From positions 62,001-126,000 of the IMG/VR virus record IMGVR_UViG_3300022921_000002: a stretch of 64,000 bases of DNA, one strand, 5' to 3'. Under the pieces are notes generated by a model. That model saw nothing but the letters and a program-made list of their open reading frames with translations. It was not told the DNA's origin and made no database searches. Shown piece by piece: positions 16,857-52,434 of the stretch. The position numbers and the translations under genes were made by a program. The stretch's first letter is position 1. Each line of letters starts with the position of its first letter.

Positions 16857-17479
16857 ATCATCTCCATATCATTTTCAGCTCGATGGATTGCCTGCAAACG
16901 CATAACATCCGCAAGAATATCCCATGAGCTATCGTGTTCTTTAAAATTATTTTCCCACACTTCTGTACTATTGATTGGACAAAAACCATTGATCTTTGGG
17001 AAATCCAATTTTGCATCAATATAAGTACGTGTATCTCGTATTCTCCAAAACTTTAGGTATTCTTCCATGTGTAGAAGTTTGTTTTGTGATTTAAACAAAC
17101 GACCTAGAATAATAGGATCAAACGTATTTGATCTTGACCACCAATATGTAATGTTTGGTTGGCTAATCAAATAATCCATAAACTCTGAACAGAACATTTC
17201 AACAGTTAAATCATTGGGTGTTGGTTTGATATGCCTACGCACCTCAGGACCTAGTGACTCCCACCAATTAACTGTTGATGCATCAACTTCATATCCATAC
17301 TTTTTAACCTGATTAACAACATCAAGTTTAAACCGTTTTGCTTTTACAACATCGTTGAAGTTGTATGGCTCATCAAGAAACTTATCCCAATTGAATACCA
17401 TAACCGAACAGTCGATTACAGCACATTTATTAGCATCCTTTCCGAATGTTTCGAAGTCAATTATAAGATCGTTTCTCAC
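16853..17479 (-). CDS. dexA: DexA-like 3'-5' exonuclease (DEDD)
   Basis: IIDFET, WSRSNTFD, WRIRDTRT, HDSSWDILAD. Confidence 0.8.
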   Translation of the reverse strand: MRNDLIIDFETFGKDANKCAVIDCSVMVFNWDKFLDEPYNFNDVVKAKRFKLDVVNQVKKYGYEVDASTVNWWESLGPEVRRHIKPTPNDLTVEMFCSEFMDYLISQPNITYWWSRSNTFDPIILGRLFKSQNKLLHMEEYLKFWRIRDTRTYIDAKLDFPKINGFCPINSTEVWENNFKEHDSSWDILADVMRLQAIHRAENDMEMI

Positions 17480-18699
17480 GCAAAGAACTCCTCTAATGTA
17501 GGTTGATTACTTGTACCTCGGACATCCATTTCTGTCTTTTCAGTATGATTATTCTGACGCAAATAGTTTGTTTCAGACATAGGTAGTTCACCGTTAAGGA
17601 ATTTTGCAATCTGCAAGTGCATATCACGAGATGTTGGTACAGGAACATTTTGGGCAATGTGGTTCATAGAAGTCATTCCATTAAGCAACTCAAAATCATC
17701 AGGGAAACCCATCAAATACAATGCTTCACGGATTGTTAGTGAACGGTCATAGTGCGGATGTACTGTGTCTGCAAGGTTACGTCCAATAACAGCATTCATA
17801 CAATCATCAAACACATGGACTGATGCATCCCAAACGCCCAAACCTTGAGCAAACTTTTTGATGGCATGGTCAGTTACGTGTATCCCACGTGTATGTCCTG
17901 TCTCGTGCATCCATTTATTTGCCTCTTGAATTTTACCTGATTTGTTTACATATCCAAATGCCGTTGCCGCAATCTCACGGATAACTTGACGTGCTGTCAT
18001 ATTTGATCCTGGTGGTAGCATTGCTTCAACAAAATTATAATAAGGTTCATCCATTAGGTTTTTGTTTACAATCAAATCTTGGTGTAGTGCATCATCTTTG
18101 ACATCGTTTACATATTCATCAAATCTACGACGTGGGCGTTTATGCCAATCCATAATAGGTGCAGTTTCTGATTTCCAACCAATAGCAAAGGTACGGTCAC
18201 GTGCTTGTGGAATACCATGATATTTTGTTGATGTTTTATATAATGTCATACTATAACCTGCTTTGCTGCAAATGTCAAATAGTTTATCTGCTACAGGTCG
18301 ACCTTTATTAGTAAATAGTGCAGGAGCGTTTTCAACAATAATAGCTTTGGCTTCAAACCTATTAATACCTTCTTTAAAAACTTCGTACATCCATTCGTTC
18401 TTTTCACAACCTGCACCTTTTGCGTCAGGCGCTTTTGCAGTATTCAATTGTGACAATGCAGCACAAGGTGGTGTACCGCTGACAACATCAAGTGATCTTT
18501 TTGCGGCTTCAGGAATCATTGTATAGGCAATATCTCGACCTTTTGTTACATTCTGATAGTTAACATAGTGACTATCGTTTGCTCCAAAGTCAGGATAGGA
18601 ATAGATTGTTTCAGGTGGCTTGCCGAATGCTTTTTCCGCTCCTAGCATTTGACCGCCGATTAGTGGAATGATTGGAGCCCAGGTAATTTCTTTGTTCAT
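17476..18699 (-). CDS. C5-cytosine DNA methyltransferase-like protein with atypical motif I
   Basis: PPC (IV), VENAP (VI), PQARDR (VIII), LTIREALYLMGFPDDF (IX), IAQNVP (X); motif I reads IIPLIGG. Confidence 0.8.
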   Translation of the reverse strand: MNKEITWAPIIPLIGGQMLGAEKAFGKPPETIYSYPDFGANDSHYVNYQNVTKGRDIAYTMIPEAAKRSLDVVSGTPPCAALSQLNTAKAPDAKGAGCEKNEWMYEVFKEGINRFEAKAIIVENAPALFTNKGRPVADKLFDICSKAGYSMTLYKTSTKYHGIPQARDRTFAIGWKSETAPIMDWHKRPRRRFDEYVNDVKDDALHQDLIVNKNLMDEPYYNFVEAMLPPGSNMTARQVIREIAATAFGYVNKSGKIQEANKWMHETGHTRGIHVTDHAIKKFAQGLGVWDASVHVFDDCMNAVIGRNLADTVHPHYDRSLTIREALYLMGFPDDFELLNGMTSMNHIAQNVPVPTSRDMHLQIAKFLNGELPMSETNYLRQNNHTEKTEMDVRGTSNQPTLEEFFA

Positions 18700-18712
18700 A
18701 ATATATCCTTAT

Positions 18713-19975
18713 TTAAAAAAATGCTTCGAGTGTTGCTGGTTTTTGAACTTCATATCCAGTTAAATCAGGTCTCTTATAGTTACTGTCAAATGCGGTGAAG
18801 ATTTTATCATTAATAAAACTACCATCATAATATTCAGGTTTAAGAACAGCTTTACGCAATTCGTAGATTGTTTGCTCATATGCCAATTTGTTATCAATAA
18901 GATATTGAAGATTTTTATGGAATTCTTCAGGTGTTTTTGGGCGCAAGATCTCAGGAATAGGTGTGTGACCTTGCATATCATATGACGGATGTAAGAATGG
19001 AATAACACCAGCATGGATCATTTCAATATACTTTGACGTTACCCAACCTTCTTTAATAGGAATGATAAATGTAAACTTAACATCCTGTAGTTTGTTCTGC
19101 AATTGTTTTAAATGCATTGATCCTTTAAAACGATTATCTCCTTTTGCATTATTACCCCATTTGCCATAGATCTCAACATCATCAAATTTGTCGAGTACCC
19201 ATTCCTTCAGGAGTTTATAACGTGATGGTTTGCCTTCATTAAGAACAACCATGAAGTCAGTGTTACGATTAGTATTTACTTCTTCTGTATATTCGTAATC
19301 AACACAGAATGCTGTTTCCATTGCAGCGTATTCACAGTTAACAGGAATGTCTTGCCGTGATTGATCTTCAATGCTTTTAATTGGATGAGCAGTATAGGTA
19401 TAGTCATATTGGCTCAAACCTTTAAACGGTAGGTGCATAAAGTCACGTGCTTGCCGCATTGTGTATCGAGGATCATTGATAACTTCAACATAATGTGGCT
19501 TACATTCATTTAGCCAAAAAGTCAACGGTGTAACATACCATTTTGTCATATCAAGAACAAATGCTGGTTTGCCATCATCGTTTTCTTCACGAACCTTTTT
19601 CATCTTTTCGGGAATACTTACGTTACCGATTTGACCTACCATCATTACCGTGGCATCAAGCGTGATATTATTTTCTTCAAAATATGTTTTAATCCACCAA
19701 AAATACCGATCAGTTGGTACTCTTTCAATTTTCATTTCTGCCCAAATATCAATAACATTATTATAAGGAAACAGATCTGCTTTATCCGTTTCAGTTAATG
19801 AAGCGAAGTCAGATCTTCCTACAATATAAAATATTTTATCAGGGTTGTTGTTTGCAATAGCACGAAGAACACAAGATGCCTCATTGTCACCACCGACAGG
19901 AGAATATTTGTTTGTCCTTAGCTTTACTGATTTACCAATTTTGGCAAAGGCAATATGTTTCATAATTAAGTCCAT
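18713..19975 (-). CDS. GT-B glycosyltransferase, T4 beta-glucosyltransferase-like (putative hmC sugar transferase)
   Basis: MKHIAFAKIG N-terminus, DVEIYGKW, KFTFIIP...TSKYIEMIHAGVIPFLHPSYD; next to sugar-activation genes. Confidence 0.6.
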   Translation of the reverse strand: MDLIMKHIAFAKIGKSVKLRTNKYSPVGGDNEASCVLRAIANNNPDKIFYIVGRSDFASLTETDKADLFPYNNVIDIWAEMKIERVPTDRYFWWIKTYFEENNITLDATVMMVGQIGNVSIPEKMKKVREENDDGKPAFVLDMTKWYVTPLTFWLNECKPHYVEVINDPRYTMRQARDFMHLPFKGLSQYDYTYTAHPIKSIEDQSRQDIPVNCEYAAMETAFCVDYEYTEEVNTNRNTDFMVVLNEGKPSRYKLLKEWVLDKFDDVEIYGKWGNNAKGDNRFKGSMHLKQLQNKLQDVKFTFIIPIKEGWVTSKYIEMIHAGVIPFLHPSYDMQGHTPIPEILRPKTPEEFHKNLQYLIDNKLAYEQTIYELRKAVLKPEYYDGSFINDKIFTAFDSNYKRPDLTGYEVQKPATLEAFF

Positions 19976-20328
19976 TCCATAGTTTTAACGAATTGCTCGG
20001 GAGTTATTGCTTTATCGTCAATATAGTAAACACCGTATGGTTTACCCCAAACAATTTCATCATAAGGAACGTCGTACTTTTTTAGCCAATCGACTGTAAT
20101 CTGTCCGACGTCTTCAATAATTTTATTTATGTCACCGCCATGAGTTAACATTCTGCGTGCTGTATGTAGCACAATCCGATAACCTTTTGACTTTGCCTTT
20201 TGCAGACTTTTAATCATAGGTTCATTTGGTAGAGCCATAGCATACTTCTGTTCTGATTCTTTTTGGTTATGTCTAGGGTAACATATAGTATCGTCTATGT
20301 CAACTACAATTGTTTCTTGCGTACTCAT
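19966..20328 (-). CDS. HAD-family phosphatase (capsule biosynthesis EcbF/BcbF-like)
   Basis: VVDIDDTI, LHTARRM, VPYDEIVWGKP, YYIDDKA. Confidence 0.85.
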   Translation of the reverse strand: MSTQETIVVDIDDTICYPRHNQKESEQKYAMALPNEPMIKSLQKAKSKGYRIVLHTARRMLTHGGDINKIIEDVGQITVDWLKKYDVPYDEIVWGKPYGVYYIDDKAITPEQFVKTMEWT

Positions 20329-21775
20329 TAATATAATCTCTCATTCTTTGTTGTCTGTCTTCGCAGTCATAATGAAGTTTAATACAAGTTGCGATTAACA
20401 GTGCACCGCCATCTATGATTTCGTCATAATCATTAGGAAAGTACTCTTTAATTAATTCAGAAAAACATTCCCGAACCGCTGTGGGGTATTTATGCCCCGT
20501 AACTAGTTCGTTATATCCATGATATAGGTCGTGTGACAATTTGCACATATCATAAAGGTAATCACCACCGATACCTATATAATCACCATAAGATCCTCGT
20601 GGATCCAATAATGTAAAAGCATCATTATATGGGTTATACAGAATGTTGCCAAAGTGCAAATCACCGTGCATAGCATCAACAGGTTTTGCCTTTTTCAGAC
20701 AGCGTTCCGCAACATTTCGGTAATACGGACTATCAGTTTCTAATCGTTCTTCTGTTTTATCAATCCACATCTTTTTTGCATTGTCAGGAAAATTGGCAGT
20801 AAACTCAAGAGTTGGCTTACGATGAAAATGGTTTGACATTGTAACTATAACTCTTTCAATCAAATACCGTATAGTACTTTTTGATATGTCCTCATGAGCA
20901 AATAGATCAGATAGCAGAATGCCTGACTCATAGGACATGGTCAGGGAATAATCATCTTTTAATACTTTAGGAATGAGCATGCTTTGAATAGGTGACAGTG
21001 ATGTATACCAATTCTTTTCATTCATAATAGTTCTTGTGGCAAAACTGTTATTTGCATTTGGAATCTTTGTAATCATATTGAGATCGGCATGATATTCAAA
21101 CGAATTAAACTCACGTGCCTTTAGTGTCAACAATGTAGCACAAGTTTTATGGTATGAGGCAATATCACCAATATCATACCACAATTCTGTACTTACGTTA
21201 TTAAAGTTACCATAATCTTCAAGTGCATCCGAGATATCATATCCTTTGCTATCACAAAAAGCAATGGATGCAGTTTGACCACACTTAAAGCTGTATAGAC
21301 CTACGAGTGCGGTTGCGTTATCAATGTTTTCTTTTGGTTTATTGTAATATTTTTCACCATCCCACATACACCAAGCAAAGTGATCTTCAACTTGTTTTGT
21401 TAAAAGGAAGTCTGTACCCAACGGCATATTTTCTTCAAGGATAATTGCGTCACCCAACCAAACAACAAGAGGACATTCCCAATTACCCAAATTTTCAATA
21501 CCAACAGCAATAGCGTCACGAGGTCCATTTAGTGATCCTTGTTTTACACATTTAATATTTTTATATTTTGATTTTTCAACCCAGTCACGAATATCATTAT
21601 GCTTACCATCAACAATAACGATCTGCCCAACTTGATCAGCATTCTTATAAATTGATTCAATAATATATTCAATAGTAGGTTTACCGTGGACACGGATCAT
21701 AGCCTTGCTACAATTTGCTGTTAGCGGTTTAAGGCGTGTTGCTTCTCCTGCCGCTGGTATCACTACATTTATCAT
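20300..21775 (-). CDS. Fused sugar nucleotidyltransferase plus APH/choline-kinase-like domain
   Basis: N-terminal IPAAGEATRL, WLGD, WYDIG; C-terminal HGDLHFGNIL, LDPRG. Confidence 0.8.
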   Translation of the reverse strand: MINVVIPAAGEATRLKPLTANCSKAMIRVHGKPTIEYIIESIYKNADQVGQIVIVDGKHNDIRDWVEKSKYKNIKCVKQGSLNGPRDAIAVGIENLGNWECPLVVWLGDAIILEENMPLGTDFLLTKQVEDHFAWCMWDGEKYYNKPKENIDNATALVGLYSFKCGQTASIAFCDSKGYDISDALEDYGNFNNVSTELWYDIGDIASYHKTCATLLTLKAREFNSFEYHADLNMITKIPNANNSFATRTIMNEKNWYTSLSPIQSMLIPKVLKDDYSLTMSYESGILLSDLFAHEDISKSTIRYLIERVIVTMSNHFHRKPTLEFTANFPDNAKKMWIDKTEERLETDSPYYRNVAERCLKKAKPVDAMHGDLHFGNILYNPYNDAFTLLDPRGSYGDYIGIGGDYLYDMCKLSHDLYHGYNELVTGHKYPTAVRECFSELIKEYFPNDYDEIIDGGALLIATCIKLHYDCEDRQQRMRDYINEYARNNCS

Positions 21776-22409
21776 AATTTAATCTCCACTCGTCGTATTC
21801 ATCTTCAAGGTTAACCCATTGTGGTTTACATAGACCTGACCAACTATGTCTCTTGTCCCAAACAAACCACGCATATGCAATCATACCACCAATCTGATGT
21901 TTCTTTTCAATCGGCTCAATAGAATCCTTTTTGAATTGAACTCGGTCCGATAAAAATATTATATCACTAGGAGGGTGGTTTGTAAACAACTTTTTTCGTT
22001 TTTTTCCTTCTAAAAAGGTTAAACGTAGAAACATTGCTACATAATCATATTCACCTATCCATTTTTCCGCCATCTTTCGTGGTAAGTCTTTATGATATGG
22101 TGGGTTTGTCACTACTCCATCAAAACCTGTTGGCTTTTGCAATTCCATTGCGTCATAAGAAGTATTTATGCTACATAAAGAATCGGAATATTCATTGAGA
22201 TCATAACTTAAAACATTGTGACCATTCCGCGCAAGCTCAACCGAAATGTTACCACGACCTGCGCATGGTTCAACTATATCTCTTGGTGGTTTACAATACT
22301 TTGTGAGAACGAATGTTGCAAGTGGAGGTGTTGGGTAAAAATCATTCGTTCTTCGGTTAGGGTCATCTTTCTTGACCCCAACATAGACATCGGTTAAACT
22401 ATTAGCCAA
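21729..22409 (-). CDS. N6-adenine (or N4-cytosine) DNA methyltransferase
   Basis: DFYPTP, EPCAGRGNI, VVTNPPY. Confidence 0.85.
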   Translation of the reverse strand: MANSLTDVYVGVKKDDPNRRTNDFYPTPPLATFVLTKYCKPPRDIVEPCAGRGNISVELARNGHNVLSYDLNEYSDSLCSINTSYDAMELQKPTGFDGVVTNPPYHKDLPRKMAEKWIGEYDYVAMFLRLTFLEGKKRKKLFTNHPPSDIIFLSDRVQFKKDSIEPIEKKHQIGGMIAYAWFVWDKRHSWSGLCKPQWVNLEDEYDEWRLNYDKCSDTSGRRSNTP

Positions 22410-22905
22410 GGTGTGTTACCAAAATACCTGCCTCTTTAAACATAGGCGCAGATTGCGTGGTCCATAAGTCAACCCATTTCTCGGGTGTGTTGTATGTTGC
22501 TTCGCGGATTACAACTCGGCGAATACCGGATTGAATAATAAGTTTAGTACAGTCAGGACACACTGGCAATCCGTGGACATATATTGTTGCATTCTTTAAT
22601 GAAACACCAGAATACAAAGCATTCATCAAAGCATTAGTTTCCGCATGGACAATCCGTGGGTATTTTTCATCTCGGTTTTCTAAACGCTCAATACTATCTT
22701 CAATACCTTTTGGAAAACCATTATAACCAGTAGCAAGAATACGTCGTTCGTCATTTACACAAACAGCACCAATCTGACTCGACGGATCTTTACTCCATTT
22801 AGAAATTGTTTCAGCCAATTCCATAAATCGCTTATCCCATTTGAGTTGACGTTCATCTTCCTCACGGTATTTTCGACTTATAAATCTATCATATGGTTCT
22901 TGCAT
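22402..22905 (-). CDS. cd: dCMP deaminase
   Basis: SKDPSSQIGA, GYNGFPKG, HAETNA, PVCPDC. Confidence 0.92.
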   Translation of the reverse strand: MQEPYDRFISRKYREEDERQLKWDKRFMELAETISKWSKDPSSQIGAVCVNDERRILATGYNGFPKGIEDSIERLENRDEKYPRIVHAETNALMNALYSGVSLKNATIYVHGLPVCPDCTKLIIQSGIRRVVIREATYNTPEKWVDLWTTQSAPMFKEAGILVTHLG

Positions 22906-24143
22906 TACATACCTCGAATAGCAATAGTTGAATTTAAACCACCAAACGCAAAGTTATTACTGATTGCAACATCAACCTTCTTTTCCTTTGCGGTATTTGG
23001 TACGACGTCAAGATCACATTCAGGATCAGGTTCTTCATAATTAATTGTTGGTGCAATAATGCCATCGTTTACTGCCATAATTGCCGCAAGTAATTCAACT
23101 GCACCTGTTCCGCCAATACAATGTCCGTGCATAGATTTGGTTGAACTTACACTCAATTTATGAGCATGGTCACCGAATGTTTGTTTGATAGCATCAATTT
23201 CAGTTCTATCATTTGGAACTGTGCCTGTACCATGAGCATTTATATAATCAACTTGTTCTGGGTTAATTGATGCATCTTTGAGGCATTTTTTCATTGATCT
23301 AATCAATCCTGAAACTTCAGGCATCACAAGATCACTTGAGTCTGCAGTACACGCCGCACCTAATACTTCACAGATGATATTTGCACCACGATTTTTAGCA
23401 TGCCAATATTCTTCAAAGACAAATACACCTGCGCCTTCACCGTGAACAATACCTTGACGCCCAAGAGAAAACGGTCGACAGTAACCTGGGCTTACAACGC
23501 GCAAACCTTCCCATGCTTTCATTCCTGATAGATTTAGAATTGCTTCTGAACCACCTGTCAGCATAACAGGAGCCATACCGTATTTAACCATATGGAATGC
23601 TTGTGTCATTGCGTGGTTAGCAGAAGCACATCCTGACGTTACAGTAAATGATGGACCTTTGATATTATGTTCCATTGAGATATGGCAAACAGGAGCATTA
23701 CCCATAACACGTGGAATAATAAAAGGATTAGCACGGCGTTTTGGATTATCAGATGCAAAGTAATTATGATATGTCCGTTCCCAGGTTTCAGCGCCACCAC
23801 TACCGTTACCCATAATAATACCTGCTTCCTCAGCAAGTTCACCATCAAATTCTAAACCTGATTGTTCTACTGCCTCGCGGGCTGCAAGTATATTGAGTTG
23901 TGTAAACCTATCAAAGATTGCAATTTGCATTCTTGTCCAATGGTCTTTTTCATCATAGCCTTTAATTTGGCCACCACGAGTGTAGCGCATATTTTGAATT
24001 TCTATGATGTTTTGGAGTTCGCTAATGCCGTCGGTGCCTTCGGCCATTGCTTTCATTGTATCTTGGGCAGTCCATCCTAAAGAATTTATAGTGCCCATGC
24101 CTGTAATAACAACACGGTTAGTCTGTCTTGTTGAGCTCATCAA
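22905..24143 (-). CDS. fabF: Beta-ketoacyl-ACP synthase II, FabF/NodE-like
   Basis: RVVITGMG; catalytic Cys in TSGCASANHA; His in INAHGTGT and KSMHGH; NNFAFGG; KAWEGLRV segment typical of NodE-like paralogues. Confidence 0.93.
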   Translation of the reverse strand: MMSSTRQTNRVVITGMGTINSLGWTAQDTMKAMAEGTDGISELQNIIEIQNMRYTRGGQIKGYDEKDHWTRMQIAIFDRFTQLNILAAREAVEQSGLEFDGELAEEAGIIMGNGSGGAETWERTYHNYFASDNPKRRANPFIIPRVMGNAPVCHISMEHNIKGPSFTVTSGCASANHAMTQAFHMVKYGMAPVMLTGGSEAILNLSGMKAWEGLRVVSPGYCRPFSLGRQGIVHGEGAGVFVFEEYWHAKNRGANIICEVLGAACTADSSDLVMPEVSGLIRSMKKCLKDASINPEQVDYINAHGTGTVPNDRTEIDAIKQTFGDHAHKLSVSSTKSMHGHCIGGTGAVELLAAIMAVNDGIIAPTINYEEPDPECDLDVVPNTAKEKKVDVAISNNFAFGGLNSTIAIRGM

Positions 24144-24321
24144 TTAATGTTTTCCTTTTTTCACTACCCATTGCTCCATCAAAAAGTGATTTGGCAGAAG
24201 TCATAAGACAACTGCCGAGCATTAGGATTTCTTCATTATCATCACACATCATAATAAGCCGATCTAATTCAGAATTAAAATAAGTCATTCTTTTTACAAC
24301 GTGGCGTGCGGAATGTGGCAT
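24118..24321 (-). CDS. Hypothetical protein
   Basis: 67-aa ORF coupled to its neighbours. Confidence 0.5.
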   Translation of the reverse strand: MPHSARHVVKRMTYFNSELDRLIMMCDDNEEILMLGSCLMTSAKSLFDGAMGSEKRKTLIDELNKTD

Positions 24322-24593
24322 TACTCTTCAACAAGCTCCACTGAAATAACTTTCTTTACTTTAATACCATCCCACCGATCCTTGCGGATATCGTAACAAC
24401 CAGTATGAGAAGGTGTCAACACAGGTGGATTGTTTATGCGGCCGCGCTTGTTTGGCATATCAGGAATTAGTTCAGGCTTGAGTGTGTAATGCTTACTGCG
24501 TGTACCAGTTTTATCATTACGTTCCCAGGTGACAAGGCATTCGCCTTCCTGTAATTTAGCTTTAAATGCTGCTTTACTCCATGTCCCTAGCAT
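24321..24593 (-). CDS. WYL-like/Sm-like small protein
   Basis: KLQEGECLVTW...YTL...YDIRKDRWDGIKVKKV resembles the DUF2693/WYL_2 pattern. Confidence 0.45.
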   Translation of the reverse strand: MLGTWSKAAFKAKLQEGECLVTWERNDKTGTRSKHYTLKPELIPDMPNKRGRINNPPVLTPSHTGCYDIRKDRWDGIKVKKVISVELVEE

Positions 24594-24810
24594 CGGATTC
24601 TCCTATCATTCGTTTTTCCATATTTTCTTTTACGTCCATTACTTTTTCATTTTCAATTATATTAATAATGATATTAGTAATGTCTAAATCTTTTTGTAGG
24701 AAAGACATTTTGGTTTTTATTTTTTCAATCTGTGCTCGATAAAATTCAAGCTCTTTTTCTTTTCTGAGTTTTGTCTCGATAACATCTGATATTCGTATTA
24801 ATTTACTCAT
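24574..24810 (-). CDS. Coiled-coil hypothetical protein
   Basis: 78 aa, heptad-rich. Confidence 0.55.
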   Translation of the reverse strand: MSKLIRISDVIETKLRKEKELEFYRAQIEKIKTKMSFLQKDLDITNIIINIIENEKVMDVKENMEKRMIGESDARDME

Positions 24811-24818
24811 GGATATAT

Positions 24819-25517
24819 TTATACAACAAGATCAAAATGACGTTCGTATACGTGCAAGTTCATCACTTGCCATGTCAGCATGCCTTTTTCAATAGTAAAG
24901 TGTTTATTACCAGGAAGCTCACAACGGCTGTTCCATCGAGTAACAAGTTGATCCATTAGGTATTGAGCCCATGCGTAATCATTCTTGTAACCAAATACAA
25001 CATCATTAGAACGCATTTGCGATACCATATGTAGAATACCATCACGGATATAGAATGTTTGAGCGTTGGTACAAATGAAATCAGACTTACCGTTTTCATC
25101 AAACTCAACCCAGATAGATGGACGATTGTAAACCATTTGAGCACGACGGCTGTCAGGATTACGCCACAGTTCATCAAAAGCATTTTCAAATTGATTGAAA
25201 TACTTTGGTGAATTTACAAGGTGACCGTAGTTTGAATTGATTTCACCGTTTGGATCAGCAGCATATTGCCATGCCGCAGGTGGTTCTTTAGATGGTCCGT
25301 AAATATCATTAATATTTGTTGAACCTGATTTGTACCATTCCAATTCTGATTCAATATAACTTTGACTTGGTTTACCAAAGATTGCTGGTTCAGTTGCAAG
25401 AAAGTTTGCACCGATTAATTCAATAGTACGTTGGCCTGTTTTATCAATAGTGAATGCTTCATCTTTAAGCTCACCTTTGAAAAACTCACGGATATCATAT
25501 ACGCTATCAATTCTCAT
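24819..25517 (-). CDS. gp42: dCMP hydroxymethylase (T4 gp42 family)
   Basis: DKTGQRTIELIGANF, ELEWY, GEINSNYG, NPDSRR, DFICT, MRSNDVVFGYKNDYAW (Asp at the dCMP-specificity position), LHVYERHF. Confidence 0.93.
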   Translation of the reverse strand: MRIDSVYDIREFFKGELKDEAFTIDKTGQRTIELIGANFLATEPAIFGKPSQSYIESELEWYKSGSTNINDIYGPSKEPPAAWQYAADPNGEINSNYGHLVNSPKYFNQFENAFDELWRNPDSRRAQMVYNRPSIWVEFDENGKSDFICTNAQTFYIRDGILHMVSQMRSNDVVFGYKNDYAWAQYLMDQLVTRWNSRCELPGNKHFTIEKGMLTWQVMNLHVYERHFDLVV

Positions 25518-26014
25518 GCGAATGTCCTTTTATAGTTTGACTTGTCTATTTCTTTAATTCTATTATACAACGGTTCGTTATTAATGTCAATAATTTTATT
25601 AAATGTTTCGAGCGCAAATCCTGCGGTATGCCTATTGTCTCGTTTGTTTTGAATAACTCTAAACCTACGTTGACCAGGTGGAGGTGCTTCCCATAATGTA
25701 ACAAGCTTTGATCCAGGCCGTGGGTTTTGAACAATAATCCATCGGTCGGCATTTAAACACTTATCAAGTTGATTACTTACGGCACCACCTTTAGTTGTTG
25801 TAATCGGAACAGTAAATGCCTCATACGTTTCCATGTTAGGTACTTTAAAATGGTAATAAATTGTTTGGAATTTAACTTCGGCATGTCTGCCGTCAATCAT
25901 CATATCCTTTGACATATCAAACGGATCTTCCGACATTTCAACTTTGCAATTTTGCATTTCAAAGTATTCTTTTACAATACGTTCACCTAATTTACCTAAC
26001 CGTTCTATGCTCAT
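25514..26014 (-). CDS. PD-(D/E)xK nuclease-like protein
   Basis: GKLGERIV...D-MMIDGRHA-EVK pattern. Confidence 0.55.
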   Translation of the reverse strand: MSIERLGKLGERIVKEYFEMQNCKVEMSEDPFDMSKDMMIDGRHAEVKFQTIYYHFKVPNMETYEAFTVPITTTKGGAVSNQLDKCLNADRWIIVQNPRPGSKLVTLWEAPPPGQRRFRVIQNKRDNRHTAGFALETFNKIIDINNEPLYNRIKEIDKSNYKRTFA

Positions 26015-28394: not shown

Positions 28395-28986
28395 GTTCAT
28401 AATTAAATGTTTTGATATCTCTTTCATACCAATCTCCTATATCATTTATAAGCTTAGGAGTCCAAAGATTAGGGTAATCGCCTGTGACATTATACTTTTC
28501 TTGTAGTTCAACGCTGAAATAGTTTTTTACATCTTTCTTTAAAGTCTCAGTTTTCATCACATGGCACATTATTTTCCCATCATCGTTAGTAATGTGGTCT
28601 AATTGATTATGCCAATGAAGATGTGGTCTGTGCCATGTGAACGGCATTTCTATAAGTCTGTGCCTATCTTCAATAAATGCCTCAAAGCTTGAAAGATCAG
28701 TACCATGAACCTCATAATCTCTTGTCTTTGCATGCCAATAGCGAGAAGCTGTTCTCTGCCATGGATTTCTTACAACAGCAAATGCTTCAAACTTATCTCT
28801 ATATTCTGGGTAAAGGTCTTTCCATCTACTATGCTCAGCTCCTGGATATCCAATAACTTTTAAGCCCTGAATATAATCATAGTCTTTTAATTTATCTACA
28901 GTGTTAATGATAATTTGAGACTTTAGTGCGTTGCAATATCTTATAGAGAACCCACCTGTCTTTGGAATATGAATAAAAATTTTCAT
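28372..28986 (-). CDS. Sulfotransferase (Sulfotransfer_2 family)
   Basis: PAPS-binding motifs FIHIPKTGG and VRNPWQR. Confidence 0.85.
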   Translation of the reverse strand: MKIFIHIPKTGGFSIRYCNALKSQIIINTVDKLKDYDYIQGLKVIGYPGAEHSRWKDLYPEYRDKFEAFAVVRNPWQRTASRYWHAKTRDYEVHGTDLSSFEAFIEDRHRLIEMPFTWHRPHLHWHNQLDHITNDDGKIMCHVMKTETLKKDVKNYFSVELQEKYNVTGDYPNLWTPKLINDIGDWYERDIKTFNYEPNHHLRR

Positions 28987-29438
28987 AATCTATATACTGC
29001 GTATGCATTTTCTCCGTGTTTAAATGTCATCCACTCAGTCATACGAATGAACCCAAACTCTTCAGCATGAGAAAATGTAGGCCTACGAGGTAAACACCAT
29101 AAAAACTCACAACCTTCTCTTCTTCCTTGGTCTGCCACAGCTTGCCACATTATTTGAGATAACTTTTGTCTTCTATAATCTTCATCTACCCACACTCCAC
29201 GTCCTCTATAATAAGTTTCTGAAGTCTTGTGTCCTGAGTTTGAAGCTATAAGTTTATCTCCGTCATACAAGCCCCAGTAGGTGGCTTTATATTTTGTAAA
29301 TATTTCTTTATTGTTTCCAAGTTCAGGAAAAGTCATATCAGAAATATAATAGTGCTCATTCCCAGGCCACAACTTGTCCCAGGCTTCTTTAATCTGTTCT
29401 TTGGTTATTTCTCTAAGCTGATAATTCTGCATAGTCAT
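28983..29438 (-). CDS. GNAT acetyltransferase
   Basis: RGVWVDEDYRRQKLS acetyl-CoA motif. Confidence 0.8.
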   Translation of the reverse strand: MTMQNYQLREITKEQIKEAWDKLWPGNEHYYISDMTFPELGNNKEIFTKYKATYWGLYDGDKLIASNSGHKTSETYYRGRGVWVDEDYRRQKLSQIMWQAVADQGRREGCEFLWCLPRRPTFSHAEEFGFIRMTEWMTFKHGENAYAVYRL

Positions 29439-29961
29439 TCAGTACATTTACTACAAGGTGTATTCTATCTTCTTTACTTGAATTGAAGGCAGTGTGCTTT
29501 AACATAGTATTGGTTAAATACCACGTGTCTTGTTTGAGATGCATAATCTCATCATCTATAACCATAAAGCATCCTTCCTGTGTTTTTACAGGATAGTGTA
29601 TTCTTATTTGAGAATCAGTATGCCATGATAAACAAGTAAACGGTAAAGATTTCATTAATCTGACTCTACCGATTTTATATCTTTCATTCAACATATTATA
29701 AACAGTTTCAAGTACGGTGCCACGGAACACTGAGCACACGGTGTTGAAATCTTGTTCCTTGAGTTCTGTTTCTCGCAATGGTACTATAGTCTGACCATTT
29801 TTATAAACCTTTTTTGACCAATCATATTTCAAACTACCACATGCCATCTTTGTGTTATCAGGTGCATCCGATGTAGTTGTAATACCGATCTGTGTTTGAC
29901 CATCCCATTCAATATGATCTAATGTAAATGGCGGTAATTCTAATTCAGTAAAATTTTTCAT
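29413..29961 (-). CDS. Aspartyl/asparaginyl beta-hydroxylase-like 2OG-Fe(II) oxygenase
   Basis: RVRLM, WHTD, RIHYP, HTAFN, RIHLV. Confidence 0.75.
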   Translation of the reverse strand: MKNFTELELPPFTLDHIEWDGQTQIGITTTSDAPDNTKMACGSLKYDWSKKVYKNGQTIVPLRETELKEQDFNTVCSVFRGTVLETVYNMLNERYKIGRVRLMKSLPFTCLSWHTDSQIRIHYPVKTQEGCFMVIDDEIMHLKQDTWYLTNTMLKHTAFNSSKEDRIHLVVNVLNDYAELSA

Positions 29962-30650
29962 GGTTCAATCACAAGAAAAGGATATTCTAATTCGTGTACG
30001 ATTTGAATAGTACCACCAAGATGGCCTAATACGAACGGTGGTCTATACATTGTCAAAAATGTTTGGCATGGAGTATTATTTGCTTGTATCTGATCTCGTA
30101 TCAATACATTGTTATCGGTAAGATAAGCTATGTTTGTATCGGTCTCATTCTCTAAGTTACGTATATCAATACTTGACCCATCTCTTTCAACACGTGCCTT
30201 ATAAAACCTATCAAGTAATTTTGTACTATTCGTTCCGATAAGACTGATGATGATTTTCTTATAGGTAAATGTTTCTTTCATCCACCGAACGGTTTGTTTG
30301 AACTCATTAAAATCTGTATGGGTAAATACACTAAACGCAAAAATAATATCTTGCTTTGTATTGATATTGGGAAACGGTTCGTCGAGATTACCAGTCTGAT
30401 TATAAACTTTATTATATTTGTTATAGTGAAAAAAGTTAGCATCAGGATAATTTTTTGCACCAACATCCAATGCACCTTTATCAACATCAACACAAGTATA
30501 GTTACTTTGTTTGATTGGAAAATTATCAAACGATAATAGGTTACCTTGATTGCCACCCCAATCTAAAAATGTTGTTGTACTTGATAAATCATCAACCTCT
30601 AAAAGGCTGTTAAGACTGATTACCGATTTTTCTACCGGGTATAAATCCAT
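29958..30650 (-). CDS. Class I SAM-dependent methyltransferase
   Basis: FLDWGGNQG, CVDVD, FSVFTH. Confidence 0.75.
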   Translation of the reverse strand: MDLYPVEKSVISLNSLLEVDDLSSTTTFLDWGGNQGNLLSFDNFPIKQSNYTCVDVDKGALDVGAKNYPDANFFHYNKYNKVYNQTGNLDEPFPNINTKQDIIFAFSVFTHTDFNEFKQTVRWMKETFTYKKIIISLIGTNSTKLLDRFYKARVERDGSSIDIRNLENETDTNIAYLTDNNVLIRDQIQANNTPCQTFLTMYRPPFVLGHLGGTIQIVHELEYPFLVIEP

Positions 30651-31344
30651 AATCCCAATCTCCCCATATTAATTTGCGTTCACCACAAGACCAACATACA
30701 CCACACGGTTTTTCTGTGTCAGGTATATTAGTACAGCATGACCTCGTTTCCTGCAACAAATCAAATAAATCAAATCTCCTGTAGATTGACGCAACAAACC
30801 TTTTATCAACATTTGCAAATGGAGAATAGTATGGATATCCAAATCTATCAATTGTAATAGGAATATCGTTTTCATTCCGTATACCAATCATTGGATCACA
30901 TTCTTTCCAAAGATTAATATGCGTACCATCTTTTAATTCAATGTCAACATCAAATCGAGGGTTAGCTGTATTACCGCCAATAAGCATATCATACTCACCA
31001 CGGCCAAACACTTCTTTTTGATATTTATGTAGGTGAGAGTCGTTATAATCATCACCGTAGACTGTATGGTGAGACAAGATGTTGTGGTAATCAAACTTGC
31101 TAATCATATATTCAATGATGTTGGCAGACCTTCGTGCCTGCCATCTATACCGCTTGTCAAAGGCTAGAGTAAGGCATCCAATCGTTGTATCGTGTCGGTT
31201 ATTTTCCGTTAAGTATTTGATTAGTAAATAAAAAACCAATGCCGAATCAGCACCACCGCTTAAATTAAAAAGTATTCTTTTACATTCTAACGGTATTTCA
31301 AAGCTTATAGATTGACCAAACTCATCCTCAAGATACATCATCAA
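30610..31344 (-). CDS. QueC-like PP-loop ATPase
   Basis: LSGGADS and TRSCC...PCGVCWSC Zn motif. Confidence 0.7.
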   Translation of the reverse strand: MMMYLEDEFGQSISFEIPLECKRILFNLSGGADSALVFYLLIKYLTENNRHDTTIGCLTLAFDKRYRWQARRSANIIEYMISKFDYHNILSHHTVYGDDYNDSHLHKYQKEVFGRGEYDMLIGGNTANPRFDVDIELKDGTHINLWKECDPMIGIRNENDIPITIDRFGYPYYSPFANVDKRFVASIYRRFDLFDLLQETRSCCTNIPDTEKPCGVCWSCGERKLIWGDWDYGFIPGRKIGNQS

Positions 31345-41567: not shown

Positions 41568-41634
<67 letters not shown>

Positions 41635-41644
<10 letters not shown>

Positions 41645-41819: not shown

Positions 41820-41893
41820 TGGCAAGGGTGGTAGGAATCGAACCCACACCAACGGGTTTGGAATCCGTTGTACTGCCATTATACTACACCCTA
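41820..41893 (-). tRNA. tRNA-Trp(CCA)
   Basis: Cloverleaf with TTCCAAA anticodon loop, GTGGG-TTCGATT-CCTAC T-arm, G discriminator and CCA; mismatches at pairs 1-72 and 31-39. Confidence 0.88.
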
Positions 41894-43563: not shown

Positions 43564-43872
43564 TTATTTATTAAGTTCAAACCGTTCTTCGACGTGCTCA
43601 ATACAAGCAGCAATGATATGGCCGATAGTCGGTTCACTATCAATCCATAATCTAACCGCATAGTTATCAATATCAACGTCAGGAAAGAACTTCTCCTCAG
43701 CTGCCATGATGAAATATAGTACACCCATAGAATCCATAATATCATCAAGTGCTGATTCTAAAGTAATGTCATCACGTCTGTAGTCATCTTTCAAGTATTC
43801 AAGTGCCCAATCATACATTTGTTCAAGAGGTGGGCCGCCATATTTTGTAACCATATCCAATTCCTTATTCAT
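43564..43872 (-). CDS. Acyl carrier protein, NodF-like
   Basis: ITLESALDDIM-DS-MGVLYFIMAAEEKF keeps the ACP DS-x7-MAxEExF register; acidic, 102 aa. Confidence 0.7.
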   Translation of the reverse strand: MNKELDMVTKYGGPPLEQMYDWALEYLKDDYRRDDITLESALDDIMDSMGVLYFIMAAEEKFFPDVDIDNYAVRLWIDSEPTIGHIIAACIEHVEERFELNK

Positions 43873-43880
43873 CTGTATCT

Positions 43881-43909
43881 ACTATATCAAACTTTATTTA
43901 CTTTGTCAA
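43881..43909 (-). promoter_or_regulatory. Sigma70 promoter TTGACA-17-TATAGT for the ACP gene
   Basis: Consensus boxes immediately upstream of 43872. Confidence 0.65.
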
Positions 43910-46184: not shown

Positions 46185-46186
46185 AA

Positions 46187-51322: not shown

Positions 51323-51758
51323 ATCTCGGTAACACCACACCGCATTGTTCCATAATCTTATAGAGTGTAAGTAATGCTTCGCACTCAAATTCATGGTAGG
51401 TTTTTTGATTTAAAACAATTGTATCTAATTCAGGAATGTCCATAGGGGCTATTACAATCTTATGAGGTAATAGCCCGCCGACATTAACAAGTCCTTCGAC
51501 AATAGGAGAGTTTGCTCTTGTTGTAATACCGATGATACAGTCAGCAAAAGTTCCGTATTCATATATCCATCTTTTATGCCAACCCTCATCACCACCCAAG
51601 GCGGTTAGGTGAATAGCATCAGGTGCAAAGCAATGTTTGCCAAGATGCCTTGTCATATCAGATGCAGCGTGTTGAGCAATAGCAAGGTTTCCGCCATTGC
51701 CTACAATAGCAATCTTTGGTGAATGAGATATTTTTTTAATAAGATTAAGATCTATCAA
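51306..51758 (-). CDS. SIS-domain phosphosugar isomerase (GmhA-like)
   Basis: IAIVGNGGNLAIAQHAASD, TALGGD, TYHEFE. Confidence 0.75.
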   Translation of the reverse strand: MIDLNLIKKISHSPKIAIVGNGGNLAIAQHAASDMTRHLGKHCFAPDAIHLTALGGDEGWHKRWIYEYGTFADCIIGITTRANSPIVEGLVNVGGLLPHKIVIAPMDIPELDTIVLNQKTYHEFECEALLTLYKIMEQCGVVLPRFKTVS

Positions 51759-52434
51759 GGTATTCCTCCACTAATTTTATATCGTCTGGTACATCAACCG
51801 CAGGTGTACGTTCATTAATCATATATGGTATAACATCAACCATTCCTATGAATGCTAATGTGTCTAGTCCTTTATGTGCATATACTAATTCTTGATCATA
51901 TTCTGGAAAATGCATAATTGTACCAAGATCATATGCATATAAGCCATTAATACCAACAAGATTAGGACTATCAATTAATTCACGGTCAGGTGTTCGTGTT
52001 AAGTAAACAATTTTCCCATTGCTGATAACAGCCTTAACTACGTTTACATTACTTCTTTCTTCATCGGTTAATGGATAACAACACTGAACCATTTCAGCAT
52101 TTGTTTCAAACATTTTACGAATGATTCCAGATATCATTTCAGGTGTAACACACGGTTCATCACTTTGTAAATTCACAATATAATCAGCATCAGTTTGAAT
52201 AACCGCCTCAGCAACTCGTGAAGTACAAGTGTTGTGAATCTTTTTTGTTTTAATAAGATTAGGCGCCCATATGCTGTCGTATTCGTCAGCAGCTACATAT
52301 ACTTTATTAATATCTGCGCAAGCGTTCGCGTTATCAATACAATGATTAAGAACAGATTTACCGTTTACTTCGGCAAATATTTTGCTTGGGAAACGAGTTG
52401 ATCCTGTTCTTGCTGGTATAATACAATCAATCAT
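51745..52434 (-). CDS. kdsB: CMP-Kdo synthetase KdsB-like cytidylyltransferase
   Basis: IIPARTGSTRFPSK, HNTCTSRV, IVNLQSDEP, VKAV, GLYAY, VDVPDDI. Confidence 0.8.
   Translation of the reverse strand: MIDCIIPARTGSTRFPSKIFAEVNGKSVLNHCIDNANACADINKVYVAADEYDSIWAPNLIKTKKIHNTCTSRVAEAVIQTDADYIVNLQSDEPCVTPEMISGIIRKMFETNAEMVQCCYPLTDEERSNVNVVKAVISNGKIVYLTRTPDRELIDSPNLVGINGLYAYDLGTIMHFPEYDQELVYAHKGLDTLAFIGMVDVIPYMINERTPAVDVPDDIKLVEEYLDRS

What the first reader, a model, noticed from the sequence alone, without database searches (positions are those of the whole stretch)
22905..24143. Phage-encoded NodE-like beta-ketoacyl synthase inside the nucleotide-modification operon
Seen: an intact FabF-fold enzyme with the Cys-His-His triad (SGCAS, NAHGTG, SMHGH), translationally coupled by TAATG to dCMP deaminase and lying 0.7 kb from gp42. 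Segments such as DRFTQL, KAWEGLRV and HGHCIGGTGAVE resemble the rhizobial NodE and Rhodobacteraceae FabF-paralogue type rather than housekeeping FabF. Known: NodE with the ACP NodF makes specialised unsaturated acyl chains. Condensing enzymes are unusual phage cargo. Inference: the phage may build or redirect a special acyl chain for lipid A/membrane remodelling or for acylating a phage macromolecule.
Basis: partly seen in the sequence, partly recalled or inferred. Interest (0 to 1): 0.72.

Follow-up and report, generated by a model that had tools for sequence, protein, structure and literature searches.

The report
Phage ketosynthase–ACP pair from roseobacters
A marine T4-like phage carries a working fatty-acid condensing enzyme and, 19 kb away, its own small acyl carrier protein, both derived from a bacterial gene pair that in roseobacters sits directly behind the lipid A gene lpxD, so the phage probably alters its host's outer-membrane lipid rather than its DNA.

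Summary
Window 22905-24140(-) encodes an intact 411-aa KAS II-type ketosynthase with the Cys-His-His triad. Its stop overlaps the dCMP deaminase start (TAATG) and it lies 0.7 kb from a gp42-like gene, in a complete 221-kb T4-like marine phage.

It is neither housekeeping FabF (36-37% identity) nor NodE proper (47%, sister clade). It groups at 100/100 support with a Rhodobacterales KAS (55-59%). That KAS always follows a dedicated ACP, and in 48/51 Rhodobacterales loci it also follows lpxD, which was the only LpxD-domain copy in all 3 genomes checked.

A profile of the cellular partner ACPs picks it out uniquely in the phage genome (E 2.4e-6), it keeps the Ser motif, and it models as a four-helix ACP.

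Both genes occur only in this phage species. All about 30 relatives have the TS-like gene directly abutting dCMP deaminase, so the KAS is a ~2 kb insertion and not part of a nucleotide pathway. It is fully ameliorated (GC3 0.26) and under strong purifying selection (pN/pS 0.01-0.14).

Best reading: a two-part 3-oxoacyl-ACP generator feeding lipid A N-acylation. This is inferred and not demonstrated. The host is unresolved, and expression is suggested by metatranscriptomes but not proven.

The parts
22905..24140 (-). KAS II-type beta-ketoacyl-ACP synthase, 411 aa from ATG 24140 (TTG at 24143 also in frame). Catalytic C172/H304/H341, K336 and the F398-x-F400-GG gate are intact.
   Evidence: pN/pS 0.01-0.14 among phage variants. 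Keeps 94-95% of subfamily-invariant columns. Clade with the Rhodobacterales lpxD-linked KAS at 100/100.
43564..43872 (-). Divergent acyl carrier protein (102 aa; the true start may be Met7 at 43854). Ser48 lies in a D-S-M motif at the start of helix II and is the predicted phosphopantetheine site.
   Evidence: No PF00550 hit. It is the single hit of a profile built from the cellular partner ACPs among 2,084 six-frame segments of the phage genome: E 2.4e-6, next best 2.2. It scores 24.4 bits against partner ACPs and 6.9 bits against housekeeping AcpP. The AF2 model has pLDDT 89.8 with four helices. Foldseek top hits are almost all ACPs. The core 34-66 is invariant in three variants.
22903..22907 (-). 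TAATG overlap of the KAS stop codon and the dCMP deaminase start codon (translational coupling).
   Evidence: Sequence read.
22402..22905 (-). dCMP deaminase, the downstream neighbour. In relatives it directly follows the TS-like gene.
   Evidence: PF00383 3.6e-22, phrog_174. Synteny in relatives.
24118..24321 (-). 67-aa ORF overlapping the KAS start. It occurs only in the KAS-bearing species and is part of the inserted block. It is not an ACP.
   Evidence: No ACP-profile hit.
24321..24593 (-). 90-aa ORF, also found only in the KAS-bearing species and part of the inserted block.
24574..24810 (-). 78-aa ORF between the TS-like gene and the insertion. It is also present (63-73% identity) in a few KAS-less relatives.
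24819..25517 (-). gp42-like thymidylate-synthase-family gene (probable dCMP hydroxymethylase), the upstream anchor of the insertion site.
   Evidence: PF00303, phrog_160. 50% identical to T4-like dCMP hydroxymethylases.
25562..25590 (-). Perfect sigma-70 consensus (TTGACA-17-TATAAT) upstream of the TS-like gene. It is a candidate early promoter for the TS...KAS...dCD run.
   Evidence: This is a consensus match only; the total number of sites in the region is not above shuffles.
24390..24419 (-). 10/12 sigma-70-like site with an extended -10 TG, inside the 90-aa ORF and upstream of the KAS.
   Evidence: consensus match only.
43881..43909 (-). 11/12 sigma-70-like site with an extended -10 TG directly upstream of the ACP-like gene. 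It is a candidate early promoter.
   Evidence: consensus match only.
51745..52434 (-). KdsB-like CMP-Kdo synthetase, a second gene of the Kdo2-lipid A pathway in the same phage. It may be functionally related, but it is older cargo shared with relatives.
   Evidence: NF009905 at 133 bits, below cut-off. Graded phage relatives from 91% to 49% identity.

Best explanation
The phage carries a functional two-component acyl-chain module: a KAS II-type condensing enzyme and its own dedicated acyl carrier protein. Both descend from an ACP-KAS gene pair of the kind that lies directly behind lpxD in Rhodobacterales.

Shown: the enzyme is intact, strongly constrained, fully adapted to the phage's base composition, and specific to this phage species. 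The ACP-like gene has the same distribution and resembles the KAS-partner ACPs, not housekeeping AcpP. The phage encodes no phosphopantetheinyl transferase, reductase, dehydratase or acyltransferase.

Inferred mechanism:
1. A host PPTase primes the phage ACP.
2. The KAS condenses a host acyl primer with malonyl-ACP to give a 3-oxoacyl-ACP on the private carrier.
3. This product is handed, unreduced or after host FabG reduction, to the host's LpxD, the lipid A N-acyltransferase. The cellular lpxD-ACP-KAS trio is proposed to do the same when making the amide-linked 3-oxo/3-hydroxy-C14 chains of Rhodobacter-type lipid A.

The likely benefit is to sustain or alter lipid A/outer-membrane synthesis during infection. 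Both genes appear to have early-type promoters. The position next to dCMP deaminase is an accident of insertion.
For: Enzyme integrity and type.

Phylogeny:
- The phage KAS and the Rhodobacterales lpxD-linked KAS form a clade at 100/100. NodE is the sister group and FabF lies outside.
- Within single genomes it matches the linked paralogue at 56-59%, FabF at 36-37% and FabB at 30-32%.

Cellular context:
- An ACP lies directly upstream of the KAS in 79/80 loci, and lpxD lies upstream of that in 48/51 Rhodobacterales loci.
- The same holds in 5/5 gammaproteobacterial carriers for the ACP and in 1/5 for lpxD.
- That lpxD is the only LpxD-domain gene in three genomes checked.
- 3-oxo fatty acids occur in R. 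sphaeroides and R. capsulatus lipid A, and are amide-bound in related cases (PMC5923411). A KAS product is by definition a 3-oxoacyl-ACP (established biochemistry).

Phage ACP.

Co-occurrence: both genes are found only in this species among about 30 TS-anchored and 160 SNase/CsgG-anchored relatives.

Constraint: 36 synonymous against 7.5 non-synonymous differences, pN/pS 0.06. 94-95% of subfamily-invariant positions are kept. GC3 is 0.255 against a phage mean of 0.273.

No other FAS or acyltransferase genes are present.

A second Kdo2-lipid A pathway gene, KdsB-like, is present in the phage.

The region is present in more than 15 metatranscriptome runs.
Against: - No experiment links the cellular lpxD-ACP-KAS trio to 3-oxoacyl lipid A. 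I found no paper on it, and one review describes only hydroxyacyl chains for R. sphaeroides.
- The host is unknown. The phage is 37.5% GC, whereas all close carriers of the trio are at least 52% GC. If the host is not a Rhodobacterales-type bacterium, its LpxD may not accept this donor.
- In the phage the ACP is not adjacent to the KAS, and between variants it shows relaxed overall constraint (3.5 synonymous against 9.5 non-synonymous differences).
- The KAS sits on a long branch (0.8-1.1 substitutions per site), so its specificity may have changed.
- The AU test cannot tell whether it is nested in or sister to the cellular clade.
- Metatranscriptome contigs are long and flat in depth, so DNA carry-over cannot be excluded.
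Confidence: 0.45

Rival explanations
1. General fatty-acid booster. The phage KAS simply replaces or supplements host FabF to keep bulk phospholipid synthesis going during infection, using host AcpP. The ACP-like gene would be unrelated or accessory.
For: The enzyme has the full FabF-type active site, and its best solved relatives are FabF enzymes. fabF, acpP and fabG have been listed as viral or prophage AMGs before (PMC8224337). The phage has no other pathway genes, so it must plug into host FAS in any case.
Against: It belongs to a clade that is always paired with a private ACP and is distinct from housekeeping FabF (36-37% identity). It falls below the fabF equivalog cut-off. The phage retained a matching partner-type ACP that is restricted to the same lineage.
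Confidence: 0.2
2. Phage-specific acylated product. The KAS-ACP pair builds a special acyl or polyketide-like chain. The chain would be attached to a phage macromolecule or a small molecule (lipidated virion protein, signalling lipid, modified nucleotide), possibly together with the nearby radical-SAM, methyltransferase, hydroxylase and GNAT genes.
For: The ACP-like gene heads a long co-directional block that contains two radical-SAM/SPASM genes, a methyltransferase, an Asp/Asn hydroxylase and a GNAT. NodE-type pairs in rhizobia feed a dedicated acyltransferase, NodA.
Against: No acyl-ACP-using transferase was detected in the phage. The radical-SAM block is shared with strains and relatives regardless of the KAS, and 10-20 kb separate it from both genes. 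The KAS sits in an insertion between two nucleotide genes that are adjacent in all relatives, so nothing ties it to nucleotide chemistry.
Confidence: 0.12
3. Metabolic sabotage. The pair acts as a sink for malonyl-ACP or holo-ACP/CoA precursors, or as a decoy, to shut down host fatty-acid synthesis rather than to make a useful product.
For: Only the condensing and carrier parts are encoded and there is no downstream enzyme. Phages commonly redirect host metabolism.
Against: The catalytic Cys is retained, whereas decarboxylase-only KS variants replace it, and 94-95% of subfamily-invariant residues are kept. This argues for the ancestral condensing function.
Confidence: 0.06
4. Artefact or dead passenger. 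The gene would be cellular contamination or a mis-assembly in a viral bin, or a decaying hitch-hiker without function.
For: Many 'phage' database hits to KAS are evidently bacterial contigs. The gene is confined to one phage species.
Against: The same gene in the same slot appears in many independently assembled contigs from different samples, including contigs of 86-196 kb. Its GC3 equals the phage's. The frame is intact with pN/pS 0.01-0.14. T4-type genes flank it on both sides.
Confidence: 0.02

Closest known systems
Rhodobacterales lpxD-ACP-KAS locus (uncharacterised; the KAS is often auto-annotated 'nodulation protein E' or 'FabF family')
   Same: Closest relatives by sequence (55-59%) and phylogeny (100/100 clade). 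Same 400-aa single-domain-pair KAS with an identical active site. It works with a small private ACP of the same subtype, and there are no reductase or dehydratase genes in the module.
   Different: In bacteria the ACP lies immediately upstream of the KAS and lpxD lies upstream of that. In the phage the ACP is 19 kb away under its own promoter-like site, and there is no lpxD. The phage proteins are highly diverged (long branch; ACP about 25% identical) and AT-adapted.
NodF/NodE of rhizobia (Rhizobium leguminosarum pSym)
   Same: Same broader subfamily of dedicated ACP+KAS pairs that make a special acyl chain for one acyltransferase. 47% identity. Sister clade (99/93).
   Different: Not an orthologue. 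NodE clusters with the Hyphomicrobiales sequences and is embedded in nodABC-nodD-nodFE-nodL. The phage has no nod genes. NodE's polyunsaturated product needs host FAS enzymes and NodA.
Housekeeping FabF (KAS II) and FabB (KAS I)
   Same: Same fold, same Cys-His-His chemistry, same length. The best solved structural relatives are FabF enzymes.
   Different: Only 36-37% (FabF) and 30-32% (FabB) identical to the copies in the same genomes that hold the closer paralogue. It is below the TIGR03150 cut-off, and those enzymes use the general AcpP.
Previously reported viral fatty-acid and LPS AMGs (fabG-acpP-fabF in predicted roseobacter prophages, PMC8224337; fabF in virome catalogues; LPS gene clusters of marine T4-like cyanophages, the last from my own knowledge)
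   Same: Host-derived lipid or envelope genes carried by phages of marine bacteria.
   Different: Those are housekeeping-type genes in host order within predicted prophages, or survey hits without analysis. Here the pair is the lpxD-linked type, split into two loci, in a lytic-type T4-like genome, ancient and under selection. The 32 other KAS genes in IMG/VR are only 27-38% identical, so they are independent.

Membership tests
Beta-ketoacyl-ACP synthase, KAS I/II class (thiolase superfamily) | N- and C-terminal ketoacyl-synthase domains (PF00109 + PF02801) | tested here: met
   5.8e-36 and 4.7e-33, both far above the cut-off.
Beta-ketoacyl-ACP synthase, KAS I/II class (thiolase superfamily) | Cys-His-His catalytic triad with the conserved Lys and the Phe gate | tested here: met
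   C172, H304, H341, K336 and F398/F400 align with FabF structures and are invariant in the family alignment.
Housekeeping FabF (TIGR03150 equivalog) | Score above the curated equivalog cut-off; orthology with fabF in the fabG-acpP-fabF cluster | tested here: not met
   410 bits against a cut-off of 493.75. 36-37% identity to genomic FabF and a separate clade.
NodE (rhizobial nodulation KAS) | Falls in the NodE clade | tested here: not met
   R. leguminosarum NodE groups with the Hyphomicrobiales sequences at 100/100. The phage groups with Rhodobacterales at 100/100.
NodE (rhizobial nodulation KAS) | Encoded next to nodF within a nod gene cluster | tested here: not met
   The phage has no nod genes and its ACP is 19 kb away. 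The true cluster is seen in L140.
NodE (rhizobial nodulation KAS) | Makes trans-polyunsaturated C16-C18 chains on NodF | not testable with these tools
   Needs biochemistry.
Rhodobacterales lpxD-linked ACP-KAS pair | Phylogenetic placement with the clade | tested here: met
   100/100 and SH-aLRT 100. Nested versus sister position is unresolved (AU p 0.84).
Rhodobacterales lpxD-linked ACP-KAS pair | Dedicated ACP of the partner subtype present | tested here: met
   A single genome-wide hit of the partner-ACP profile, E 2.4e-6. It is preferred over AcpP.
Rhodobacterales lpxD-linked ACP-KAS pair | ACP immediately upstream of the KAS and lpxD upstream of the ACP | tested here: not met
   The phage ACP is at 43.6 kb and the KAS at 23-24 kb. 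There is no LpxD-like or hexapeptide gene in the phage.
Acyl carrier protein (PF00550 PP-binding) | Match to the Pfam model | tested here: not met
   No hit at E<=0.01 or E<=1 genome-wide.
Acyl carrier protein (PF00550 PP-binding) | D-S-L-type serine at the N-terminus of helix II in a four-helix bundle | tested here: met
   S48 falls in the nearly invariant Ser column. The AF2 model has pLDDT 89.8 with helix II starting at residue 48. Foldseek hits are ACPs at TM 0.57-0.73. Caveat: the model leaned on an alignment made mostly of real ACPs.
Acyl carrier protein (PF00550 PP-binding) | Phosphopantetheinylated and loaded in vivo | not testable with these tools
   The phage has no PPTase, so a host enzyme would be required.
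Auxiliary metabolic gene of a bona fide virus | Embedded among viral genes, recurrent across samples, under purifying selection | tested here: met
Auxiliary metabolic gene of a bona fide virus | Expressed during infection | tested here: inconclusive
   The region is held by more than 15 metatranscriptome runs at depth 34-69, but on long flat contigs, so DNA carry-over is not excluded.

The most novel reading that the evidence does not exclude
A lytic marine phage reprograms the N-acyl chains of its host's lipid A with a private ACP-ketosynthase module. In doing so it points to the function of an uncharacterised bacterial operon (lpxD-acp-kas) as the long-unexplained source of the amide-linked 3-oxo-acyl chains of Rhodobacter-type lipid A, the structural template of the TLR4 antagonist Eritoran.
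Probability: 0.3. Interest if true: 0.75.

Novelty: new variant of a known kind. Interest (0 to 1): 0.58.

Why it matters
Phage-borne metabolic genes are well known, and fabF-like hits appear in virome catalogues. This case differs in three respects:
- The enzyme is not the housekeeping one. It is the specialised, ACP-paired type tied to the lipid A gene lpxD.
- The phage kept both halves of the pair as separate genes.
- The pair is old, constrained and unique to one abundant coastal phage species.

If the lipid A reading is right, a lytic phage would be editing the membrane anchor of LPS itself rather than the O-antigen sugars. It would also give a direct genetic handle on how 3-oxo-acyl lipid A is made, which is of pharmacological interest. 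If it is wrong, the module is still a compact two-protein system for testing how a ketosynthase and a very divergent carrier protein recognise each other.

Tried and rejected
- Complex prediction for KAS plus the ACP-like protein returned 'no answer' (score 0.01, controls not run). It counts neither for nor against binding.
- The first fold of the ACP-like protein, from 3 sequences, was unusable at pLDDT 48.
I removed that sequence and did not resend it.
- Megablast of 12 kb against GenBank phages found nothing. The tblastn hits there are at most 42% identical and mostly look like bacterial contigs filed as phage.
- The generic PF00550 model missed the ACP.
- Searches of the phage for PPTase, hexapeptide/LpxD-type, PlsC-type acyltransferase, FabG and FabZ/FabA genes were all negative.
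- I tried to cross-validate the 3-oxo-lipid-A idea in Gammaproteobacteria.
- Literature searches found no study of the lpxD-acp-kas locus.
- The AU test did not resolve a nested versus sister position for the phage KAS, so no donor genus is claimed.
- Metatranscriptome contigs cannot prove transcription.
- Looking for a low-GC roseobacter carrier among the 80 closest loci found none.
- I considered the 67-aa ORF directly upstream of the KAS as a decayed ACP. It has no similarity to the ACP profile, so I rejected that idea.
Full report
WHAT IS THERE. The window is bases 62,001-126,000 of a 221,447-bp IMG/VR virus record that CheckV rates complete. It is 37.5% GC. It is a T4-like phage with gp44 clamp loader, gp45 clamp, gp62, RegA, dUTPase and a gp42-like gene. 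It is deep-branching: its gp44 is at most 57% identical to any cultured phage, and the nearest are Stenotrophomonas DLP_6, OM43 phage Melnitz and cyanomyoviruses.

The ORF 22905..24143(-) is real. The probable start is the ATG at 24140, giving 411 aa as JGI calls it. It has both ketoacyl-synthase domains. It aligns end to end with solved FabF enzymes (1j3n, E 6.6e-92) and has Cys172, His304, Lys336, His341 and the Phe-x-Phe-Gly-Gly gate in place. Its stop overlaps the dCMP deaminase start as TAATG. No PHROG family matches it.

WHICH KETOSYNTHASE. It scores below NCBIfam's fabF equivalog cut-off, 410 against 493.75 bits. A search of 5.8 billion proteins gave one 99% cluster, which is the same phage in other samples. 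After that nothing appears until 57-60% identical 402-aa proteins of Phaeobacter, Ruegeria, Roseovarius and other Rhodobacterales, several auto-named 'nodulation protein E'. An exhaustive HMMER scan agrees.

Within single Rhodobacterales genomes the phage protein matches this paralogue at 56-59%, housekeeping FabF at 36-37% and FabB-like enzymes at 30-32%. Genuine NodE, taken from the nodABC-nodD-nodF-nodE-nodL cluster of R. leguminosarum pSym, is 47% identical.

A 91-sequence tree and a more careful 56-sequence tree both place the phage with the Rhodobacterales clade. Support is SH-aLRT 100 in the first and UFBoot/SH-aLRT 100/100 in the second, and 96/93 for a position inside the marine-roseobacter subset. 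The NodE/Hyphomicrobiales clade is the sister group (99/93), and FabF and FabB lie outside. An AU test does not reject a tree in which the cellular Rhodobacterales form a clade without the phage (p 0.84). I therefore claim the clade but not a donor genus.

The phage branch is 4-7 times the median length. Part of this is compositional: FYMINK residues make up 28% against 21%, and GARP residues 28% against 35%.

WHAT THE CELLULAR RELATIVES DO. In 80 genomic loci of this subfamily, a small ACP gene lies immediately upstream of the KAS in 79. The exception is a contig with only 106 bp of upstream sequence. In 48 of 51 Rhodobacterales loci, and in several other Alphaproteobacteria, an LpxD gene lies immediately upstream of the ACP. 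Five gammaproteobacterial carriers, out of 401 genomes sampled, all have the ACP, and one has the whole trio.

In three Rhodobacterales genomes the LpxD N-terminal domain occurs only once, and that copy is the one in the trio. The locus therefore contains the housekeeping lipid A N-acyltransferase followed by a private carrier and condensing enzyme, with no reductase or dehydratase.

Lipid A of R. sphaeroides and R. capsulatus is reported to contain 3-oxo fatty acids, which are amide-bound 14:0(3-oxo) in related cases (PMC5923411). One review lists only hydroxy-acyl chains. A KAS product is a 3-oxoacyl-ACP. My inference is that the trio supplies LpxD with that chain on a segregated ACP. This is unproven, and I found no paper on the locus.

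THE CARRIER PROTEIN.
- It aligns with the Phaeobacter partner ACP across the Asp-Ser-Leu motif, 45% over 29 residues.
- A profile of the cellular partner ACPs, run against all 2,084 six-frame segments of the phage genome, hits this ORF alone. The match has E 2.4e-6 and covers profile positions 19-82 of 85. The next best segment has E 2.2.
- A profile of housekeeping AcpP from the same genomes gives only 6.9 bits against 24.4 bits, and the best pairwise hits are all roseobacter partner ACPs.
- Ser48 falls in the nearly invariant serine column.
- The segment 34-66 is invariant among the three known variants, which are 92% and 73% identical overall.
- With a 55-sequence alignment the protein models at pLDDT 89.8 as a four-helix bundle with Ser48 at the start of helix II. 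Foldseek then returns almost only ACPs. The caveat is that the alignment is dominated by true ACPs.
- JGI's own label for the 92% variant is 'acyl carrier protein'.

The phage has no phosphopantetheinyl transferase, so a host enzyme must prime the ACP.

DISTRIBUTION AND HISTORY. The KAS occupies the same slot in every copy recovered, in contigs from IMG/VR, JGI and ENA. The order is TS-like gene, then 78-, 90- and 67/56-aa ORFs, then KAS, then dCMP deaminase.

Using the TS-like gene as an anchor I recovered 39 viral loci ranging from 100% down to 60% identity. In all about 30 loci at 89% or below, the TS-like gene is followed directly by dCMP deaminase with no KAS. This includes the nearest sister group, which shares the dGTPase-TS-dCD-methyltransferase-nucleotidyltransferase order. 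The KAS, with two small ORFs, is thus a ~2 kb insertion into an ancestral TS-dCD junction.

Using the SNase-like and CsgG genes that flank the ACP as anchors, I collected 160 loci (1.42 Mb) from relatives. They contain neither an ACP-like gene nor a KAS, except in contigs of this same species. 74 of 77 SNase relatives have at least 500 nt upstream, so the slot is covered. Both halves of the pair are therefore specific to the same lineage.

By contrast, the phage's KdsB-like gene has a smooth series of phage relatives from 91% down to 49%.

The KAS is not recent. Its GC3 is 0.255, against a phage mean of 0.273 +/- 0.035 and 0.60-0.80 in cellular homologues.

It is under strong purifying selection. 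Examples are 36 synonymous against 7.5 non-synonymous differences (pN/pS 0.06) and 25 against 1 (0.01), similar to the neighbouring TS-like and deaminase genes. It keeps 94-95% of positions that are at least 95% conserved across the subfamily, and its four changes at the most conserved sites are conservative.

The ACP shows weaker overall constraint (3.5 synonymous against 9.5 non-synonymous differences), with the changes lying outside the invariant core.

The other 32 KAS genes in IMG/VR are only 27-38% identical, so they are independent.

EXPRESSION. More than 15 metatranscriptome runs (salt marsh, marine, estuary) hold the region. Three salt-marsh runs cover it at assembler depth 34-69, and one marine run holds a diverged strain. 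The contigs are long and flat, so DNA carry-over cannot be excluded. I treat this as compatible with transcription, not as proof.

Three sigma-70-type promoter-like sites are relevant: a perfect consensus upstream of the TS-like gene, a 10/12 site with an extended -10 upstream of the KAS, and an 11/12 site with an extended -10 directly upstream of the ACP. Together they suggest that host polymerase transcribes both genes early. These are consensus matches only.

MECHANISM AND CONFIDENCE. High confidence, about 0.9: this is a functional, selected, phage-adapted ketosynthase with a cognate private ACP, captured from a Rhodobacterales-type ACP-KAS pair.

Moderate confidence, about 0.4-0.45: the pair produces a 3-oxoacyl-ACP that enters lipid A N-acylation through the host's LpxD, sustaining or altering outer-membrane lipid A during infection. 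Three things support this step: the lpxD linkage of the orthologues, the absence of any other consuming enzyme in the phage, and a second Kdo2-lipid A pathway gene in the same genome (KdsB-like). Weakening it are the unknown host, the GC gap to known carriers, the long branch, and the lack of any experiment on the cellular trio.

The rivals are a bulk FabF-like booster, a phage-specific acylated product, and metabolic sabotage. They are ranked lower for the reasons given under rival explanations. An artefact is effectively excluded.

NOVELTY. Viral fabF and acpP hits have been listed before. Examples are fabG-acpP-fabF in predicted roseobacter prophages (PMC8224337) and virome AMG catalogues. 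Marine T4-like phages are also known to carry LPS genes (from my own knowledge). What is new here is the type of enzyme (lpxD-linked and ACP-paired), the retention of both partners as split genes, the clean insertion history, and the testable link to 3-oxo-acyl lipid A. I rate it a new variant of a known kind, of moderate-to-good interest.

Noticed in passing
window 44588-48850 (+): CsgF-like 44910-45371, CsgG 45372-46184, FecR-like 46924-48069, faint curlin-repeat 47957-48850: The phage encodes a curli-type secretion set. CsgG scores 186 bits against the NCBIfam equivalog model, below its cut-off, and CsgF is recognised by Pfam. CsgG relatives at 47-75% identity occur in at least 116 IMG/VR contigs, so a large clade of marine phages carries an outer-membrane curli channel. 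Its function in a phage is unexplained.
   Followed up: partly
window 53420-55462 (+): A 680-aa protein with a CHASE2 sensor domain and a guanylate/adenylate cyclase domain (Pfam labels from syntenic sister contigs). This is a phage-encoded signalling cyclase.
   Followed up: no
window 28983-37415 (-): A co-directional block with two radical-SAM genes (one with SPASM), a Methyltransf_12, an Asp/Asn beta-hydroxylase and a GNAT, among ORFs of unknown function. It looks like a peptide- or small-molecule-modification cassette.
   Followed up: no
window 51306-53269 (-): A KdsB-like CMP-Kdo synthetase (133 bits, below cut-off) next to a weak GmhA/SIS-like ORF and a 280-aa unknown. KdsB-like relatives form a graded series (91% to 49%) on phage-sized contigs, then drop to 34% or less for cellular KdsB. 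It is old phage cargo of the Kdo/LPS pathway.
   Followed up: partly
window 17476-22409 (-): Downstream of the KAS lie a phrog_799 DNA methyltransferase with only weak Pfam methylase matches, a sugar-1-phosphate nucleotidyltransferase fused to a kinase-like domain (491 aa), a capsule-biosynthesis-type HAD phosphatase, a 420-aa unknown and a C5 cytosine methylase. Together with the gp42-like hydroxymethylase these could serve DNA hypermodification (glycosylated hmC) or envelope sugar synthesis.
   Followed up: partly
L171/L172 (dCMP deaminase) and L173 (TS-like gene), syntenic with window 22402-25517: Mosaic alleles occur right at the borders of the KAS insertion. In two strains the dCMP deaminase is only 74% identical while the KAS and the next gene are 98-100%. 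In another strain the TS-like gene is 86% identical while its neighbours are 99-100%. This suggests recombination hot spots flanking the insert.
   Followed up: no
window 23224-23247 and 23497-23521, runs X1 and X2: The same salt-marsh metatranscriptomes contain a GC-rich contig (2.8 kb, depth about 8) that matches only two 24-nt conserved stretches of the phage KAS. It is most likely a cellular homologue transcribed in the same community.
   Followed up: no
IMG/VR loci L012-L043: 32 other viral contigs carry KAS genes only 27-38% identical to this one, some on contigs of 110-364 kb. They may be independent acquisitions by jumbo phages or cellular contamination. I did not examine them.
   Followed up: no
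window 41568-41644, 41820-41893, 59288-59365 (-): Three phage tRNA genes: Pro-TGG, Trp-CCA and Arg-TCT.
   Followed up: no
L107, L115, L117, L119, L131, L132, L166: The lpxD-ACP-KAS trio is not confined to Rhodobacterales. It also occurs in Rhodospirillaceae, in several unclassified Alphaproteobacteria and proteobacterial MAGs, and in one gammaproteobacterium. The Acidobacteria, Lysobacterales and Hyphomicrobiales members have only the ACP-KAS pair.
   Followed up: partly
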